Below, one piece after another: positions 12,516-55,650 of a stretch of DNA of 64,000 nucleotides; position 1 is the first letter of the stretch, and each line of letters begins with the position of its first letter. The position numbers and the translations under genes were made by a program. The DNA lies in IMG/VR virus record IMGVR_UViG_3300049215_000771, positions 124,001-188,000 of that record, one strand, 5' to 3'. A model generated the notes under the pieces. That model had not been told where the DNA came from and made no database searches. It was given only the letters and a program-made list of their open reading frames with translations.

Positions 12516-13490
12516 ATGGGAGTCTACTCGAACGTGCTGGCCCCGCCCAATCCGGGCTTCTGGTTCGTGGTCGTCGTGGGCGCATTGCTCACGTTCGGCC
12601 CGATCATCATTACCCTCATCAAAGAAGCAAACGAACACTCCAGCTATGGGGAAAAGTCCAAAAAGCGTGACAAGAAGGGAGCCATTTCCCTGGGTCTGTT
12701 CAGCGCTATCGCCACCATCCTCCTGATTCACTTCTTCGGTGACAGCCGGGTGCTGGGCTGGGTGTACGACACGCCGGATCGCTCCGACCCCCAGGGATTA
12801 CAAGCCCTCATCGTCCCGTTCGGCGTCGTGTTCTGGATGTTCGTGGTGATCGAAACTGTTGTTGCCTTCTGTGCCCTTCGCTACCGCAGCGGCGGCTGGG
12901 CGACGGTTTCCCTCATCGTGACCATCTTCCTCGTCCAGTTCGTGACGGGCGTTCCTGTCATTCCCTGGATAATCCATCACTATATTCTCACGCCGGTTTT
13001 GTTCGGTCTGTGGGTCGTTGTTGGCGTGGCCTGGTCCTTCTTCTACAAGTGGGACAGCCTCGTGTCCAAACACCGTGAATGGTACGATCCCATCCGGGCG
13101 GATTGGCTGAAGTCGAAGGGCTTCAACGAGCAAACCGACTTCAGCCTCGAAGACAAGGCCGATTGGGAACTCTACTTTGAGAGCCACAAGGTTCGTGAAG
13201 ATGGCGAGGTAATCGAGGCCCGCCCGAAGTACCGTCATCACAAGGCCGAACTGCTGGGCTGGGCAACGCTGTGGCCTCTCAGCATGTTCGAGACGTTCCT
13301 GTACGACTGGCTGGCCCAAGTCTTCGTCAAGTTGTATCATCGGCTCGGCTCGGTCCTCAACTGGATCATGGCCCGTCGCTGGAAGGGCACGGAAGGGCAC
13401 ATGCTCACGCAGGAAGAGCGTGACATTCTCGCTCAGGAGCGTGCTAAGAAGGGCCAAGAAGAAATGCCAGACCTTCGGGGTCGCCGCTAA
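12516..13490 (+). CDS. polytopic membrane protein
   Basis: AAGGAG SD; several transmembrane segments. Confidence 0.75.
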   Translation: MGVYSNVLAPPNPGFWFVVVVGALLTFGPIIITLIKEANEHSSYGEKSKKRDKKGAISLGLFSAIATILLIHFFGDSRVLGWVYDTPDRSDPQGLQALIVPFGVVFWMFVVIETVVAFCALRYRSGGWATVSLIVTIFLVQFVTGVPVIPWIIHHYILTPVLFGLWVVVGVAWSFFYKWDSLVSKHREWYDPIRADWLKSKGFNEQTDFSLEDKADWELYFESHKVREDGEVIEARPKYRHHKAELLGWATLWPLSMFETFLYDWLAQVFVKLYHRLGSVLNWIMARRWKGTEGHMLTQEERDILAQERAKKGQEEMPDLRGRR

Positions 13491-49989: not shown

Positions 49990-50141
49990 TATAATGATTC
50001 AACTGCCGAGGCGAGGCTGAAAGCCACGCTACACGTCGGTCGGCGTGAACGATCTGCTTGACAGACTCGATAAGCTGGGCAAGCAAGCCCAGGGAGAACA
50101 ATGCGAACTGGATCAACCTTTACCCAACCTGGAGAACGAAC

Positions 50142-50327
50142 ATGGACCCGAACAAACCGGGCTGTCTGCCGGGATATTCGTCGAAGGGGGTGTGGAACCT
50201 CCTCGACAAACTGGACCATCGGGTGAACAACCCTCCACCGAAAAACGAGGATGAAGAACAACCTCAAGTGAGCCTGCCTGGTGGGTGTGCCGCCACAAAC
50301 ACCCCGCCACCGGACGAAGTGAAGTAA
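50142..50327 (+). CDS. small hypothetical protein
   Basis: GGAG SD before ATG 50142; overlapping alternative ORF 50045-50254 exists. Confidence 0.45.
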   Translation: MDPNKPGCLPGYSSKGVWNLLDKLDHRVNNPPPKNEDEEQPQVSLPGGCAATNTPPPDEVK

Positions 50328-50402
50328 GGAATGGCCGCAGGCGCTCTCGACGAGCTACCTGCGGCATTCTCGTTGATGGAGAAATTTTCTTGTAGCGATT
50401 CC

Positions 50403-50428
50403 GAACCTTGCCTGGCCTGGACGGTCTT
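50403..50428 (+). promoter_or_regulatory. class-II promoter (GAACC-N16-GTCTT)
   Basis: Ten-copy motif, upstream of the helicase. Confidence 0.75.
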
Positions 50429-50476
50429 CATGGTGGAGATACGGATCACATAGGCTACGAGAGAAGGAAGCGATTC

Positions 50477-52792
50477 ATGGCTACCTCGAACAAGTTTGCT
50501 GGTCGCTGCAACAATCCCGCCTGCCCCCTGGGTAAGAACCGCTACAACGGCGTTGCTGTGGGCGAGGGCTACATCACCAAGATCAACGACAAGTGGGTAA
50601 CGTGGTGCAAGGAGTGTGTCCCCGTCCAGAAGAGCGCCGGCGAAGCCGAGCGCCGTGTCCTGACGGCGGACGGCAAGATTTTCACGCCCTACGAGCCGCA
50701 GAACCTTCCGCTCATCAAGTCCCTGAAGGGGCCGGGCGGCGTTTTCGGCCCCCGCTGGAACAAGGAAGGCAAGTTTTGGGAGATTTCTCTCGAACAGGCC
50801 GACCGCCAGCGCCTCCTCGAAGTCGCCGAGCGCCTCCGCTTGGAAGTCGCCCCGCAGCTTCGTGAGGGCAATCTCGTCACCGAACAGGCGCAGAACGCCA
50901 CCCACGCCGGCTTGTATCCGTTCCAGGTCGTCGGCGTCAACTGGATGGCGAAGCGCAAGAAGGCGCTCCTGGCCGACGAGATGGGTCTTGGCAAGACGAT
51001 CCAAGCGCTCATCAGCATCCCAGCCCACGGCAAGGCGCTGGTGGTCTGCCCGGCCACGCTGAAGCTGAACTGGCGTAACGAGGCGTCCGTCTGGCGTCCC
51101 GACCTGAAGGTTGTCGTCCTGAAGGGCGGCGATTCCTTCCGGTTCCCCCAGGCCGGCGAAATCGTCATCACCAACTACGACATCCTCGCCGACTACCTCG
51201 ACCCCACACCGAAGGTGAAGGGCGCTCGCAAGGCTCCCAAGATCACCTGGGAAGCGCTGAAGGCGTGGCGTGTCAAGCTGAAGGAACAACACCCGGAAGC
51301 TGAAGGCACGACCGTCATCTTCGACGAGGCACACAAGGTCAAGAACTACAAGACCGAGCGTAGCCGCAAGGTCCGGGAACTGTCCCGCCTCAGCAGCAGC
51401 GTTTGGGGTCTGACCGGCACGCCGCTCGACAACGAGCCGAGCGACTTGTACGGCGTCCTGGACAGCCTGGACATGGCGTTCGACGTGTTCACGCCCCGCA
51501 AGGGCCAGTCGTCGTTCCGTCGCTTCCAGGAGTTGTTCGCCGTGTCGGAAGATCGCTGGGGCGCTTGTCGCTACGGCACGCCCGACCCGATGGTTCCCGA
51601 ACTGCTCCGTCGTGTCATGCTCCGTCGCACCCGTGGCGAAGTCATGCCCGACCTGCCGACGAAGACCTACACCAACCTCATTGTTGGTGACATGCCGGAA
51701 CGCATTCGTCAGCAGCTTGACGAGATGTGGGAAAGCGACGGCACGGCGCTGGAAGTCGATGGTTCGCTGCCCCCGTTCGAGCGGTTCAGCGAAATCCGGG
51801 CGGCGCTGGCGAAGTCCAACATCCCGGCGATGTTGGAATACATCGAGGAACAGGAAGAACAGGGCGTCCCGCTCGTCGTGTTCTCCAGCCACCTGGCCCC
51901 GCTGGACGAACTGCTCGGTCGTCCGGGTTGGGCGGTGATTTCTGGCGACACGAAGCTGGAGAAGCGCCAGGAGATCGTCGATGCTTTCCAGGCCGGACAC
52001 CTGAAGGGCATCGCCCTCACCATCCGTGCTGGTGGTGTTGGTTTGACCTTGACCCACGCCTGGAAGGTGCTGTTCGTGGACCTGGATTGGGTTCCGGGTT
52101 GGAACAGCCAGGCCGAGGATCGTGTTTGCCGTATCGGGCAGACTTCCAACAAGGTCGAGATCGTCCGCATGGTGAACGATCACCCGCTCACCCTGCATAT
52201 TCTCAACATCCTGGCCGAGAAGACCCGGCTGATTGAGAACGCCGTCATCAAGACGATGCCGGTCGCTGTCAGCGCTCCCGTCACCCCGTCGAAGGAAACC
52301 GAAACGGAGGAACAGTACCAGGCTCGCATGGCCCGCATCCAGCAGGCCCAGGAGGAACTGGAGAAGGCCAAGGCCGAATCCGATGCTTCCCAGGCCAAGG
52401 CCAAGGCCAAAAGCAAGGTGGACCTGATCCACAGCCGGGAGAAGGGTCGCAACCAGCGCCCGATCCTCCCGCTGACCGACAAGCGGGTTGCCGTGGTTCG
52501 GGAAGCCTTCAAGTTCATGCTGTCCGTTTGTGACGGAGCGCATCAGCGTGACGCCCAGGGTTTCAACAAGCCCGACGCCGTGATCGCCCACTACCTGCTC
52601 ACGGCGGGCCTGGAGACGCCGAAGGAAGTGGAAGCGGCCTACTACATGCTGGTCCGCTACCATCGCCAGTTGAGCAAGAGCTACCCGCTCCTGTTCAACG
52701 GTAGCCCGGAAGATCGGGCAGCCATCATCGCTGAGGCGCAGGCCGGCGAAGATTCGATCTACAGTATGGACCCGGATCGCCATACCATCTAA
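50477..52792 (+). CDS. SNF2/SWI2-family (HARP-like) helicase
   Basis: LLADEMGLGKT, IFDEAH, LTGTP, MLRRT, VVFS, GGVGLTL, QAEDRVCRIGQ. Confidence 0.95.
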   Translation: MATSNKFAGRCNNPACPLGKNRYNGVAVGEGYITKINDKWVTWCKECVPVQKSAGEAERRVLTADGKIFTPYEPQNLPLIKSLKGPGGVFGPRWNKEGKFWEISLEQADRQRLLEVAERLRLEVAPQLREGNLVTEQAQNATHAGLYPFQVVGVNWMAKRKKALLADEMGLGKTIQALISIPAHGKALVVCPATLKLNWRNEASVWRPDLKVVVLKGGDSFRFPQAGEIVITNYDILADYLDPTPKVKGARKAPKITWEALKAWRVKLKEQHPEAEGTTVIFDEAHKVKNYKTERSRKVRELSRLSSSVWGLTGTPLDNEPSDLYGVLDSLDMAFDVFTPRKGQSSFRRFQELFAVSEDRWGACRYGTPDPMVPELLRRVMLRRTRGEVMPDLPTKTYTNLIVGDMPERIRQQLDEMWESDGTALEVDGSLPPFERFSEIRAALAKSNIPAMLEYIEEQEEQGVPLVVFSSHLAPLDELLGRPGWAVISGDTKLEKRQEIVDAFQAGHLKGIALTIRAGGVGLTLTHAWKVLFVDLDWVPGWNSQAEDRVCRIGQTSNKVEIVRMVNDHPLTLHILNILAEKTRLIENAVIKTMPVAVSAPVTPSKETETEEQYQARMARIQQAQEELEKAKAESDASQAKAKAKSKVDLIHSREKGRNQRPILPLTDKRVAVVREAFKFMLSVCDGAHQRDAQGFNKPDAVIAHYLLTAGLETPKEVEAAYYMLVRYHRQLSKSYPLLFNGSPEDRAAIIAEAQAGEDSIYSMDPDRHTI

Positions 52793-52932: not shown

Positions 52933-53361
52933 ATGGCTGGGAAAGTTACCATCAATGGCCACACCTACAAAATCGGCCCGAACGATGTCGTGTTCGTCAT
53001 CGGCAAGAAGGTGCATTTCAACTACCAGGTTGTCGATGAAGGTCAACAGAACATTCCCGAAGTGAAGGTTGAAGGCGATGTTCTCGACCTTCACAGTGTC
53101 GGTGCTGTCAGCGTCACCGGCAACGTCCAAGGCAGCGTGGACACCACTGGCGCTGTCAAGTGTGGCAACGTCGGCAAGGATGTCAACACCAACGGCAAGG
53201 TCGAGTGTGGCACGGTCGGCGGCAACGTCGATACCAACGGCAGTGTCGAGGTTAGCGGTGACTGTGGCAAGATCAACACGATGGGCAGCGTCACCGTCAA
53301 GGGTAACTGCAAGGGCAGCATCGACACGATGGGCAGCGTCAAGGTGGGGAGCAGGGGATGA
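52933..53361 (+). CDS. beta-solenoid repeat protein (bactofilin/polymer-forming-like)
   Basis: Repeated G-x-V-x-T-x-G-x-V-x-x units over the C-terminal 100 aa; AGGAG SD. Confidence 0.7.
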   Translation: MAGKVTINGHTYKIGPNDVVFVIGKKVHFNYQVVDEGQQNIPEVKVEGDVLDLHSVGAVSVTGNVQGSVDTTGAVKCGNVGKDVNTNGKVECGTVGGNVDTNGSVEVSGDCGKINTMGSVTVKGNCKGSIDTMGSVKVGSRG

Positions 53362-53813
53362 TCGAACAATTTGGTCGCAAAGTCTACCTGGATGTCTGAA
53401 GGGACGGCACACTCAGCATCCGGTCGGATGACAACACGAAGGAAAGAGAAGCCGCTCTCCCTGTGTTCACGACGGATACCAGGGAGGAAGCGGAACACCT
53501 GCAAACACTGTTCACTTGCCTGGTGCATTCCGGCGCATTGAAGGGCAAGCATGTTGTTCGGGCCATCAACCAGGCCAAGAATGACCACGAAGCGTACAAC
53601 GAAATGACCCGCCTGGGCCGGCTGATGGCACTGGCCTACGAAACCTACAAAGAACGCAAAGGCGGCGTGCAGTCCCATCGCTGTGAGGAAATGACTTCGG
53701 AGTGGTATTATTCGTTCAAGGACGGCCAGCGCCGCCTATTCAAAGGCGATTACGAAGTGCAGGGCGTCCACAACTTCTGCATGTTCTGTGGGTCGGACCT
53801 ACGAGAGATTTGA
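53358..53813 (+). CDS. hypothetical protein with in-frame TGA at codon 14 (candidate selenoprotein or pseudogene)
   Basis: ATGA-coupled start 53358; MIEQFGRKVYLDV*RDGTLSIRS... is continuous with ORF 53463-53813. Confidence 0.55.
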
Positions 53814-55288: not shown

Positions 55289-55650
55289 TGATTCACGAAG
55301 AAAAAAAGATCACGATCTCGATGTCCCCTGAAGTGTATCGTGACCTTCGGAACATTGCCATCATTCGCTACATGACCGGGGCGATGGCGAATAGCGTTGG
55401 CGATGAGTTTCTGGTCAAATTGCTTCGTGTTATGGACAAGGGCGAGCAGGAATTCGTTTTTCGCTACAAAGACCCCAATTACGACGCATCCCTTCCTGAT
55501 GGGAAGGGCATCTCGATGAAGAAGGACAACACCGATGGGCAAACCCAAGGTGATCCAGTCAAGGTGGAAATTGAAGAAGTCTCCCGACCCGAAACCGATT
55601 GTTGCCCGCTTCCTGGACGATCTGGTGAAGCGAGCGGCGCAGTCGCCTGA
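55288..55650 (+). CDS. hypothetical protein
   Basis: TGATG coupling; tail overlaps the next ORF. Confidence 0.6.
   Translation: MIHEEKKITISMSPEVYRDLRNIAIIRYMTGAMANSVGDEFLVKLLRVMDKGEQEFVFRYKDPNYDASLPDGKGISMKKDNTDGQTQGDPVKVEIEEVSRPETDCCPLPGRSGEASGAVA

What the first reader, a model, noticed from the sequence alone, without database searches (positions are those of the whole stretch)
53358..53813. In-frame UGA followed by a SECIS-like hairpin: possible phage selenoprotein
ATG 53358 overlaps the upstream stop (ATGA), the coupling used throughout this genome. It reads MIEQFGRKVYLDV-TGA(53397-99)-RDGTLSIRS... and continues without further stops to 53813. A hairpin CATCC-GGTC-GGATG (53417-53430) has its loop starting 22 nt after the UGA. 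The loop GGUC is the same as the apical loop of the E. coli fdhF SECIS (GCA-GGUC-UGC), and the spacing and apical G fit the bacterial SECIS model (established). Inference: Sec insertion using host SelB, which would make this gene's expression selenium-dependent. A simple nonsense mutation or assembly error is equally possible.
Basis: partly seen in the sequence, partly recalled or inferred. Interest (0 to 1): 0.68.

Follow-up and report, generated by a model that had tools for sequence, protein, structure and literature searches.

The report
Selenoprotein gene in a huge phage
A small gene of unknown function in a 533-kb phage very probably reads its in-frame UGA as selenocysteine, and the same phage carries its own selenocysteine tRNA, so this looks like the first phage selenoprotein family backed by comparative evidence.

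Summary
ATG 53358, TGA 53397-99, the open frame to 53813 and the hairpin CATCC-GGTC-GGATG (53417-30) are all there.

On its own the hairpin is weak: 45 of 500 shuffles fold as well. The comparative evidence decides the case.
- The read-through protein has more than 100 metagenomic, phage-borne relatives, with no Pfam, PHROG or PDB match.
- About 109 of 146 aligned sequences have Cys exactly at the UGA column.
- Eleven diverged loci, mostly 35-55% identical to the window protein, have TGA at that column.
- All eleven have a hairpin whose loop starts 18-25 nt after the UGA. Eight have a GGUC loop.
- The stems covary, and GGUC sits in two different codon phases.
- Cys-type loci lack such a hairpin.
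- Every "short" gene call in the family is an artefact of starting after the TGA.

The 532,729-bp phage also encodes a proper bacterial-type tRNA-Sec (Rfam 76.5 bits, 8/5 stems) but no SelA, SelB or SelD, so it must rely on its unknown host for these.

The product's function is unknown. Sec14 sits at a beta-hairpin tip of a small alpha/beta domain. Raw reads could not be checked, and no experiment supports selenium insertion yet.

The parts
52933..53361 (+). Upstream gene (142 aa, repeat-rich, bactofilin-like). Its TGA stop overlaps the start of the selenoprotein gene (ATGA).
   Evidence: ORF list. PHROG phrog_3163 at E = 1.6e-16. Weak Pfam Bactofilin hit at 2e-4. The same gene order (SNF2 helicase, small gene, this gene) is seen in L014.
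53346..53351 (+). Shine-Dalgarno-like GGGGAG, 6 nt upstream of ATG 53358.
   Evidence: Read directly from the sequence. Comparable SD-like motifs precede the equivalent start codons in L012, L014, L017, L018 and L019.
53358..53813 (+). Full selenoprotein gene: 151 codons including Sec14, ending in stop TGA 53811-13. Public gene calls give only the 116-aa part that starts at GTG 53463.
   Evidence: Translation. Homologues align from residue 3 onwards, across the TGA. P0001 and P0002 are gene calls cut at the Val of the conserved LPVF motif.
53358..53396 (+). The 13 codons before the UGA (MIEQFGRKVYLDV), forming beta-strand 1 of the predicted fold.
   Evidence: The peptide motif (L-S/G-R-x-hydrophobic-x-L-D-V/I) is conserved between TGA-type and Cys-type homologues. 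AF2 places strand 9-13 here with pLDDT above 90.
53397..53399 (+). In-frame UGA, predicted selenocysteine codon (residue 14).
   Evidence: The column holds Cys in about 109 of 146 aligned family members and TGA in 11 loci. The TGA is identical in L010 and L011.
53417..53430 (+). SECIS-like hairpin CAUCC-GGUC-GGAUG, with its loop starting 22 nt after the UGA.
   Evidence: Equivalent hairpins are found in all 11 TGA loci, 8 of them with a GGUC loop. Covariation: 93.8% of cells paired and 6 of 6 pairs with double changes, with 0 of 500 shuffles reaching the score. No GGUC-loop hairpin, and at most a weak one, in the five TGC (Cys) loci tested.
53463..53465 (+). GTG used as the start by automatic gene callers. 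In the full protein it is Val36 of the conserved A-L-P-V-F motif, not a real start.
   Evidence: In full-length homologues the motif ALPVF lies inside the protein.
53676..53789 (+). C-terminal zinc-ribbon-like stretch (H107, C109 ... C141-x-x-C144), present only in the window/L014/P0002 subgroup.
   Evidence: Weak Pfam Zn_Ribbon_1 hit (E = 0.1). The stretch is conserved in P0002 and P0003/L014. AF2 confidence is low here.

Best explanation
Window 53358-53813 is one gene for a 151-residue selenoprotein of a new, uncharacterised family carried on phage contigs.

Proposed mechanism:
- Translation starts at ATG 53358. This start is SD-assisted and coupled to the upstream gene through the ATGA overlap.
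- At UGA 53397-99, a SelB-type elongation factor carrying Sec-tRNA(Sec) is recruited by the hairpin at 53417-30 (GGUC loop) and inserts selenocysteine at position 14.
- The tRNA(Sec) can be supplied by the phage's own gene (record position 80837-80930).
- Seryl-tRNA synthetase, SelA, SelD and SelB must come from the host.
- Without selenium or that machinery, translation should stop after 13 residues, so expression depends on selenium and on the host's Sec system.

In the AlphaFold model, Sec14 lies at the tip of the first beta-hairpin of a compact alpha/beta domain. Most relatives have Cys there. I infer that the residue acts as a redox-active or nucleophilic centre, possibly together with the semi-conserved Cys at the end of helix 1 (C54 here).

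What is shown: the gene structure, the Cys/TGA pairing, the conserved and covarying hairpin, the phage tRNA-Sec, and the absence of SelA/B/D from the phage.

What is inferred: actual Sec insertion, use of the phage tRNA for this codon, selenium dependence, and the protein's chemistry.
For: 1. phmmer of the read-through protein against 1.84 billion representatives gave 21 hits. Nine of them align across the TGA.
2. Of the nine hits that reach the column, eight have Cys and one has Arg. In 146 family sequences the column is about 109 Cys, 13 Asp, 3 Thr and 1 Arg.
3. TGA sits at the same column in window, L012, L013, L014, L017, L018 (=L020), L019, L021, L024, L033 and L034.
4. Each TGA locus whose upstream DNA is held has a start codon upstream of the TGA, 9-18 codons away at the likeliest start, most with an SD-like motif (L033). 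L013 and L034 are open at the 5' end.
5. The peptide before the TGA is conserved with Cys-type relatives.
6. All 11 loci have a hairpin whose loop starts 18-25 nt after the UGA. Eight loops are GGUC(U). The five TGC loci have none with a GGUC loop and mostly none at all.
7. GGUC is encoded as CGG-TCN / AGG-TCT in one clade and as GGT-CGT in the other, which points to selection on the RNA rather than the protein.
8. Covariation: 6 of 6 pairs have compensatory changes and 93.8% of cells are paired, against 27-46% in slid controls.
9. The Sec forms fill two whole clades, and every N-truncated gene call falls inside Sec clade A.
10. The phage has a tRNA-Sec: Rfam RF01852 at 76.5 bits (cut-off 47), 8-bp acceptor stem, 5-bp T stem, long variable arm, anticodon UCA, G at the discriminator position.
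11. The record is a phage. It has a terminase large subunit, no 16S rRNA and several PHROG hits.
12. TGA is otherwise the commonest stop codon (305 of 609 model genes), and in-frame TGA is not enriched genome-wide.
Against: - There is no experimental evidence of selenium incorporation.
- Raw reads could not be checked.
- The window's own hairpin is short (5 bp, -4.8 kcal/mol), is not significant alone and is not part of the MFE fold.
- The phage lacks SelA, SelB and SelD, and the host is unknown, so the presence of the machinery is only inferred.
- The other five IMG/VR contigs searched lack a tRNA-Sec, though they are only 31-52% complete. Three of them carry the TGA form and two carry the Cys or Thr form.
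- Three of the 11 hairpins have loops other than GGUC (GUA, GAAA, GGA).
- The D-stem of the phage tRNA-Sec has two non-canonical pairs.
- The hairpin alignment was anchored on hairpins I had already picked in each sequence, so it leans towards pairing.
- The protein has no known fold or family, so no chemistry can be checked.
Confidence: 0.85

Rival explanations
1. The UGA is translated, but not as selenocysteine. It could be read as Cys by a tRNA-Sec-like cysteine tRNA delivered through SelB, as Ser from unconverted Ser-tRNA(Sec), or as Trp or another residue by near-cognate read-through.
For: - Cys is the ancestral residue at the column.
- tRNA-Sec-like Cys tRNAs that may act as opal suppressors have been described in deltaproteobacteria (PMC5389517).
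- The phage brings a UCA-anticodon tRNA but no SelA or SelD.
Against: - The phage tRNA has the Ser/Sec-type long variable arm and G at the discriminator position, not the U73 of Cys tRNAs (the identity rule is recalled from established knowledge).
- It scores well above the Rfam tRNA-Sec cut-off.
- A conserved SelB-type GGUC hairpin is not needed for plain suppression.
- If Cys were inserted, a TGC codon would do the same job more cheaply, yet TGA is kept across two clades.
Confidence: 0.07
2. The UGA is a real stop. A 13-codon leader ORF is followed by a separate 116-aa gene starting at GTG 53463, as public gene calls have it. The hairpin would then serve some regulatory role such as attenuation or reinitiation.
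For: - All automatic gene calls use GTG 53463 or its equivalent.
- A purine-rich stretch lies upstream of the GTG.
Against: - The 21 codons between the TGA and the GTG are conserved as protein. They carry RDGT-hydrophobic-S and ALP motifs and align to the interior of Cys-type proteins.
- The called starts fall at different, arbitrary positions after the TGA in different loci: 1, 8, 22 residues and more.
- The GTG is simply the Val of the conserved LPVF motif.
- AF2 builds strands 1 and 2 across the TGA with pLDDT above 90.
Confidence: 0.04
3. A nonsense mutation (TGC or TGT to TGA) or an assembly error has made a pseudogene in this phage.
For: - A single third-position change converts TGC to TGA.
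- Reads could not be checked.
Against: - The TGA is identical in three assemblies.
- TGA is found at the same column in ten further loci, mostly 35-55% identical to the window protein, which form whole clades.
- The frame stays open and conserved downstream in all of them.
- The hairpin co-occurs with TGA and not with TGC.
Confidence: 0.01
4. The phage uses a genetic code in which TGA is a sense codon throughout (code 4 or 25).
For: - The genome carries suppressor-type tRNAs: one with anticodon UCA and three with CUA.
Against: - TGA ends 305 of 609 model genes.
- In-frame TGA with coding signal on both sides is no more frequent than TAA or TAG (41, 41 and 36).
- Homologues have Cys, not Trp or Gly, at the column.
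Confidence: 0.01

Closest known systems
Bacterial selenoprotein genes with a coding-region SECIS (prototype: E. coli fdhF; SelB / tRNA-Sec / SelA / SelD system)
   Same: - In-frame UGA followed directly by a stem-loop whose apical loop is GGUC.
- The loop starts 18-25 nt after the UGA. From my recollection of the fdhF sequence, its loop starts 18 nt after.
- Cys-containing homologues and TGA-containing orthologues both exist. These are the criteria the field uses (deep-Sep paper PMC12013277).
   Different: - The gene sits in a phage genome, and all relatives found are on phage-like or metagenomic contigs.
- The protein family is not among described selenoprotein families as far as I could check. 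It has no Pfam, PHROG or PDB match, and BSepDB, with 111 families, does not mention phages.
- The window's hairpin is shorter than the fdhF element and has no obvious bulged U.
tRNA genes 'for selenocysteine' annotated in huge wastewater phages (Viruses 2023;15:2330, PMC10747093)
   Same: A huge phage with a very large tRNA set that includes a tRNA annotated as Sec. The authors speculated that such phages might encode selenoproteins.
   Different: - That paper names no selenoprotein gene or SECIS and gives no structural check of the tRNA.
- Here the tRNA passes the Rfam tRNA-Sec model with 8/5 stems.
- Here a specific UGA/SECIS gene with Cys/Sec homologues is identified.
- Those genomes are 204-304 kb, whereas this one is 533 kb (673 kb as the ENA scaffold).
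Stop-codon recoding in phages with suppressor tRNAs (TAG to Gln, TGA to Trp; Lak and crAss-like phages)
   Same: The phage encodes tRNAs that read stop codons, and a stop codon is read as sense inside a phage gene.
   Different: - Here the recoding is site-specific, depends on a local RNA hairpin and affects one gene.
- The genome otherwise uses TGA as its main stop.
Selenoproteins of eukaryotic viruses (glutathione peroxidase homologues of molluscum contagiosum virus and fowlpox virus; recalled from general knowledge)
   Same: A virus-encoded selenoprotein that depends on the host's Sec machinery.
   Different: - Those use the eukaryotic 3'-UTR SECIS and are captured host GPx genes.
- This is a bacterial-type coding-region SECIS in a family with no cellular counterpart found, and the virus brings its own tRNA-Sec.

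Membership tests
Bacterial-type selenoprotein gene (Sec-UGA + SECIS) | In-frame UGA inside a single coding region, with protein-level conservation on both sides | tested here: met
   Homologues align from residue 3 to beyond residue 100, across the UGA. Coding score is positive on both sides. AF2 builds a hairpin across the site with pLDDT above 90.
Bacterial-type selenoprotein gene (Sec-UGA + SECIS) | Cys at the aligned position in homologues (Sec/Cys pair) | tested here: met
   About 109 of 146 aligned sequences have Cys. The motif is [LI]-D/H-[VIC]-C-[KR]-D-G-T.
Bacterial-type selenoprotein gene (Sec-UGA + SECIS) | TGA conserved at the same position in orthologues from other genomes | tested here: met
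   Eleven loci from different samples and assemblies, in two clades.
Bacterial-type selenoprotein gene (Sec-UGA + SECIS) | Stem-loop immediately downstream, with the apical loop at a fixed short distance and a G (GGUC / GpU) in the loop | tested here: met
   Loop start is 18-25 nt after the UGA in 11 of 11 loci. The loop is GGUC(U) in 8 of 11 and begins with G in all. The window's own hairpin is weak when taken alone.
Bacterial-type selenoprotein gene (Sec-UGA + SECIS) | The structure is maintained by compensatory changes and is absent from Cys forms | tested here: met
   Six of 6 pairs show double changes and 0 of 500 shuffles reach the score (the alignment is anchored on the hairpins, so it is somewhat biased). 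The five TGC loci have no GGUC hairpin. One Asp-type locus (L022) does have a strong hairpin.
Bacterial-type selenoprotein gene (Sec-UGA + SECIS) | Sec machinery available: tRNA-Sec, SelA, SelB, SelD | tested here: inconclusive
   tRNA-Sec is present in the phage. SelA, SelB and SelD are absent from the phage. The host is unknown, so its machinery could not be checked.
Bacterial-type selenoprotein gene (Sec-UGA + SECIS) | Selenium actually incorporated at the UGA | not testable with these tools
   This needs 75Se labelling, mass spectrometry or a reporter assay.
Bacterial tRNA-Sec (selC) | 13-bp acceptor/T branch in the 8/5 arrangement, long variable arm, UCA anticodon, G73, and a match to the Rfam model | tested here: met
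   ARAGORN drawing: 8-bp acceptor, 5-bp T stem, 94 nt, G at the discriminator position. RF01852 scores 76.5 bits against a cut-off of 47. The D-stem has two non-canonical pairs.
Genome-wide TGA reassignment (codes 4 / 25) | TGA rarely or never used as a stop, and many in-frame TGAs in conserved genes | tested here: not met
   TGA ends 305 of 609 model genes. There is no excess of in-frame TGA.
Any described protein family for the product | Significant match to Pfam, PHROGs, PDB sequences or a solved fold | tested here: not met
   No Pfam match, and none in PHROGs at E <= 0.001, for any of 29 members. The PDB profile search gave no match better than E 0.3. Foldseek against the PDB found nothing at E <= 0.001. 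The best VIA-align Z was 4.9 (MbtH-like), below the noise level the tool states.

The most novel reading that the evidence does not exclude
A family of small phage proteins has switched its key Cys to selenocysteine at least twice. A 533-kb phage carries its own tRNA-Sec to secure decoding of its single Sec codon. This would be the first phage selenoprotein family and the first case of a virus supplying part of the bacterial Sec-decoding apparatus for its own gene. It would also make expression of a phage gene dependent on the host's selenium status.
Probability: 0.6. Interest if true: 0.85.

Novelty: new variant of a known kind. Interest (0 to 1): 0.8.

Why it matters
- Selenoproteins are catalogued for bacteria, archaea, eukaryotes and a few eukaryotic viruses, but I found no phage selenoprotein in the literature library. 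The nearest is speculation based on tRNA annotation.
- If confirmed, Sec decoding is also used by phages, and a phage can bring its own tRNA-Sec.
- Automatic gene callers systematically truncate this family at the UGA. At least 12 public entries are cut this way.
- The family offers natural Sec/Cys pairs in a roughly 100-residue domain of unknown function, which is convenient for testing what the selenol contributes.
- The phage tRNA-Sec and its short SECIS could also interest people who engineer Sec insertion.

Tried and rejected
- **Direct family scans of the ORF.** Pfam and PHROGs gave nothing.
- **Single-protein scan of viral contigs.** It found no relatives. Alignment A2 was too loose for genome contigs and metagenome contigs. 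Tighter alignments gave 4 metagenome loci, no genome locus and then one MAG contig (L031), which does not identify a host.
- **GenBank phages.** tblastn of the Sec form and of a Cys form (P0017) against 50,697 phage records found no match. The SNF2 helicase has only distant hits (under 31% identity). blastn of the tRNA-Sec gave one weak, unannotated hit.
- **Other selenoprotein genes in the 533-kb genome.** Of 16 TGA-plus-GGUC-hairpin sites, only this one is coding on both sides. With any G-first loop, only 3 of 41 sites qualify, and the other two look like shadow or repeat frames. No second selenoprotein gene was found.
- **Genome-wide recoding.** Rejected.
- **tRNA-Sec in five other IMG/VR contigs of the family.** None found, but these are fragments.
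- **Fold and feature searches.**
  - Foldseek against the PDB and VIA-align wide gave nothing meaningful.
  - The atlas feature search gave no usable hit.
- **RNAalifold on the raw downstream regions.** It gave only a weak consensus because the loops differ in length and offset. The hairpin-anchored alignment is the informative one.
Full report
**1. The observation**

- The upstream ORF 52933-53361 ends in TGA, which overlaps ATG 53358 as ATGA.
- GGGGAG lies 6 nt upstream of that ATG.
- The frame reads MIEQFGRKVYLDV, then TGA at 53397-99, and stays open for 137 more codons to TGA 53811-13.
- CATCC-GGTC-GGATG occupies 53417-30, so the loop begins 22 nt after the UGA.

Taken alone this is not impressive.
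- The hairpin has 5 bp and -4.8 kcal/mol.
- 45 of 500 shuffles of the downstream 63 nt give one as good in the allowed position range.
- The MFE fold of 53390-53470 pairs CAUCC with an upstream GGAUG instead (z = -0.66).
- Public gene callers ignore the first 35 codons and start the gene at GTG 53463 (116 aa).

**2. What the genome is**

- The window is positions 124001-188000 of a 532,729-bp IMG/VR record (GC 52.7%), labelled 'provirus' and 100% complete.
- A near-identical sequence lies on a 673-kb ENA scaffold.
- The record has a terminase large subunit, no 16S rRNA and several PHROG-only proteins.
- Its nearest helicase relatives among isolated phages are under 31% identical. It is therefore a huge, uncultivated phage with an unknown host.
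- ARAGORN finds 56 tRNA genes. One, at 80837-80930, is a tRNA with anticodon UCA, 94 nt long, with an 8-bp acceptor stem, a 5-bp T stem, a long variable arm and G at the discriminator position.
- That tRNA scores 76.5 bits on Rfam's tRNA-Sec model, whose cut-off is 47. The next best tRNA in the genome scores 43.
- The genome has no SelA, SelB or SelD. The one SelB-like hit is a complete EF-Tu.
- TGA is the commonest stop (305 of 609 model genes).
- In-frame stops with coding signal on both sides number 41 TGA, 41 TAA and 36 TAG, so the genome as a whole uses the standard code.

**3. Homologues decide the question**

A word-based search found only the truncated gene call and a 70%-identical relative.

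An exhaustive phmmer search with the read-through translation (UGA as U) found 21 representatives. Nine of them align to residues 3-68, across the UGA.

In the alignment, of the nine hits that reach the column, eight have Cys and one has Arg exactly at the UGA position. The shared motif is [LI]-D-[VI]-C-[KR]-D-G-T.

The other hits are 'short' proteins whose called N-termini begin at assorted places just after that column. I fetched their DNA. In every case the frame continues upstream through a TGA at that very column, to a start codon 9-18 codons further up. This holds for:
- L012, L013 and L014;
- L017, L018/L020 and L019;
- L021 and L024;
- L033 and L034.

Most of these starts have an SD-like motif, and several overlap the preceding gene's stop.

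That makes eleven distinct loci, from ENA, Logan, IMG/VR and JGI assemblies, with an in-frame TGA where relatives have Cys.

A profile search raised the family to 116 clusters, all unnamed and without Pfam domains. In a 146-sequence alignment the column is:
- about 109 Cys;
- 13 Asp (a separate DVDAAG sub-family);
- 3 Thr;
- 1 Arg;
- the TGA forms, plus 12 N-truncated calls.

A quick tree places the Sec forms in two clades. Every N-truncated call falls inside the larger Sec clade. I have not assessed branch support in that tree, and the proteins are short, so 'two clades' is indicative only.

**4. The hairpin**

- All eleven TGA loci have a hairpin of 5-9 bp whose loop starts 18-25 nt after the UGA.
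- Eight loops are GGUC(U). The other three are GUA, GAAA and GGA, and all begin with G.
- Stem sequences differ (CAUCC, UCACCC, UUGUCUUC, GCUAC, UGCGUCC, GGCUUC, UCGUCC, ACGAUCA), but pairing is kept.
- On a hairpin-anchored alignment of eight sequences, 93.8% of cells pair and all six pairs show double changes. The covariation score is 0.90 against 0.30 +/- 0.085 in shuffles (0 of 500 reach it), and slid controls pair at 27-46%.
- Caveat: the segments were chosen because they form hairpins, which favours pairing. However, seven of the eight are anchored simply on GGTC.
- In clade A the GGUC is spelled CGG-TCN or AGG-TCT (Arg-Ser). In clade B it is GGT-CGT (Gly-Arg). The tetranucleotide is thus kept in different codon phases and for different amino acids.
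- The five Cys (TGC) loci have no GGUC hairpin and mostly none at all. The Thr locus has none. One Asp locus (L022) has a strong GAGC-loop hairpin that I cannot explain.
- From established knowledge (recalled, not tested here), the E. coli fdhF and Moorella SECIS loops are GGUC(U), with the G and U contacted by SelB. In fdhF the loop starts 18 nt after the UGA.

The three criteria the field uses are a Cys/TGA pair with conserved flanks, TGA-containing orthologues, and a SECIS-like structure right after the UGA (PMC12013277). All three are met.

**5. Mechanism**

The best explanation is ordinary bacterial Sec insertion, used by a phage gene.
- Initiation is at ATG 53358.
- SelB with Sec-tRNA(Sec) is recruited by the hairpin at 53417-30.
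- Sec is inserted at residue 14.

The phage's own tRNA-Sec can provide the tRNA. Serylation, conversion to Sec, selenophosphate synthesis and delivery need host SerRS, SelA, SelD and SelB. These steps are inferred.

I found no second convincing Sec codon in the 533 kb, so this gene is the only candidate client for the phage tRNA-Sec that I could identify. Three other phage contigs that carry TGA forms have no tRNA-Sec, but they are 31-52% complete.

**6. The protein**

- The AlphaFold2 model built on a 29-sequence alignment has pLDDT 82 and pTM 0.72. Residues 8-100 are above 90.
- The fold runs: strand 9-13, turn with U14-R-D-G, strand 18-22, strand 34-39 (ALPVF), helix 42-52, a long helix 76-101, then a low-confidence C-terminal zinc-ribbon-like tail (H107, C109, C141, C144). 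The tail is found only in the window/L014/P0002 subgroup.
- A second Cys at the end of helix 1 (the LF-C motif; C54 here) is present in most members.
- No family or fold match was found.
- Neighbouring genes are those of early or DNA-metabolism regions of phages: SNF2 helicase, ERF recombinase, DUF932, DUF3846, GP88 and CsrA.
- I infer a redox or nucleophilic role for the Sec/Cys residue. This is a guess from position and conservation only.

**7. Rivals**

- A nonsense mutation or assembly error is excluded by recurrence in eleven loci and three assemblies.
- A leader ORF plus a separate gene is contradicted by protein-level conservation and confident structure across the UGA, and by the arbitrary positions of the called starts.
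- Genome-wide TGA reassignment is contradicted by stop usage.
- Insertion of Cys, Ser or another residue at the UGA cannot be excluded without chemistry. It is less likely given the tRNA's features and the SelB-type hairpin.

**8. Novelty**

- In the paper library I found no phage selenoprotein gene.
- The bacterial selenoprotein database paper does not mention phages.
- One paper annotated tRNA genes 'for selenocysteine' in three huge wastewater phages and speculated about selenoproteins, without naming a gene (PMC10747093).
- Mukai et al. reported 8/4 allo-tRNAs for Ser and His in phages, not an 8/5 tRNA-Sec (PMC5389517).

So the mechanism is known. The family, the phage setting and the phage-borne tRNA-Sec linked to a specific client gene appear to be new. 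The library is not the whole literature.

**9. Limits**

- No reads were examined.
- The host is unknown.
- There is no experiment.
- Some steps rest on my own scripts: the coding model, the hairpin scan, the column counts and the tree.
- The UGA was read as U only for this gene family. That is justified by the genome's own tRNA-Sec and by the hypothesis under test.

Noticed in passing
outside the window: record G000 80837-80930 (L002:1501-1594, + strand): Phage-encoded tRNA-Sec (UCA, 94 nt, 8/5 stems, Rfam 76.5 bits). It stands apart from the two large tRNA clusters. Next to it are an endonuclease VII gene, a glyoxalase-like gene and a family-2 glycosyltransferase gene.
   Followed up: yes
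outside the window: G000 121393-121464, 121467-121540, 491736-491826 (- strand): Three tRNA genes with the amber-reading anticodon CUA. Two are about 73 nt and one is 91 nt with a long variable arm. Yet TAG is not enriched in frame and is simply the rarest stop (85 of 609). Their role is unexplained.
   Followed up: partly
outside the window: G000 13184-13278 and 55504-55586: Two tRNA-like genes that ARAGORN draws with 8-nt anticodon loops (four-base 'anticodons' cttg and aagg). They could be frameshift-suppressor-like tRNAs, intron-containing tRNAs or mis-folds.
   Followed up: no
outside the window: L032:1249-2427 (- strand; G000 about 489874-491052): A complete EF-Tu gene (393 aa; 615 bits on NF009372, above the cut-off) lies inside the second tRNA cluster of the phage. 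No SelB is present.
   Followed up: partly
window 50264-52783 (- strand): An 839-codon open frame lies antisense to the SNF2 helicase gene (50477-52792, + strand). This is a shadow ORF typical of this GC3-rich genome, not a gene.
   Followed up: no
window 50018-50060 (+ strand; G000 174018): Another TGA is followed 17 nt later by a GGUC-loop hairpin (CACGUC-GGUC-GGCGUG, -6.6 kcal/mol), with 77 open codons downstream. The upstream side has no coding signal, so this is probably chance.
   Followed up: partly
L033:559-564: In this orthologue a Cys codon directly precedes the UGA (KIFC-U-RDGT), giving an adjacent Cys-Sec pair.
   Followed up: no
L022:1522-1575: An Asp-type family member (FIDV-D-AAG) keeps a strong 8-bp hairpin with a GAGC loop 24 nt after the column (-13.3 kcal/mol; 10 of 500 shuffles as good). 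It could be a relic of a SECIS, or it could be unrelated.
   Followed up: no
window 52933-53361 (+ strand): The upstream neighbour is a 142-aa protein made of G-x-V / G-N-V repeats. It matches phrog_3163 and has a weak bactofilin-like hit. A small gene in the same position is kept in the related phage contig L014.
   Followed up: partly
L010 (ENA ERZ12294693 scaffold_68_c1): The same phage sequence sits on a 673,178-bp scaffold, about 140 kb longer than the IMG/VR 'provirus' record. Either the phage is larger than 533 kb or the scaffold includes host DNA. That extra stretch could reveal the host.
   Followed up: no
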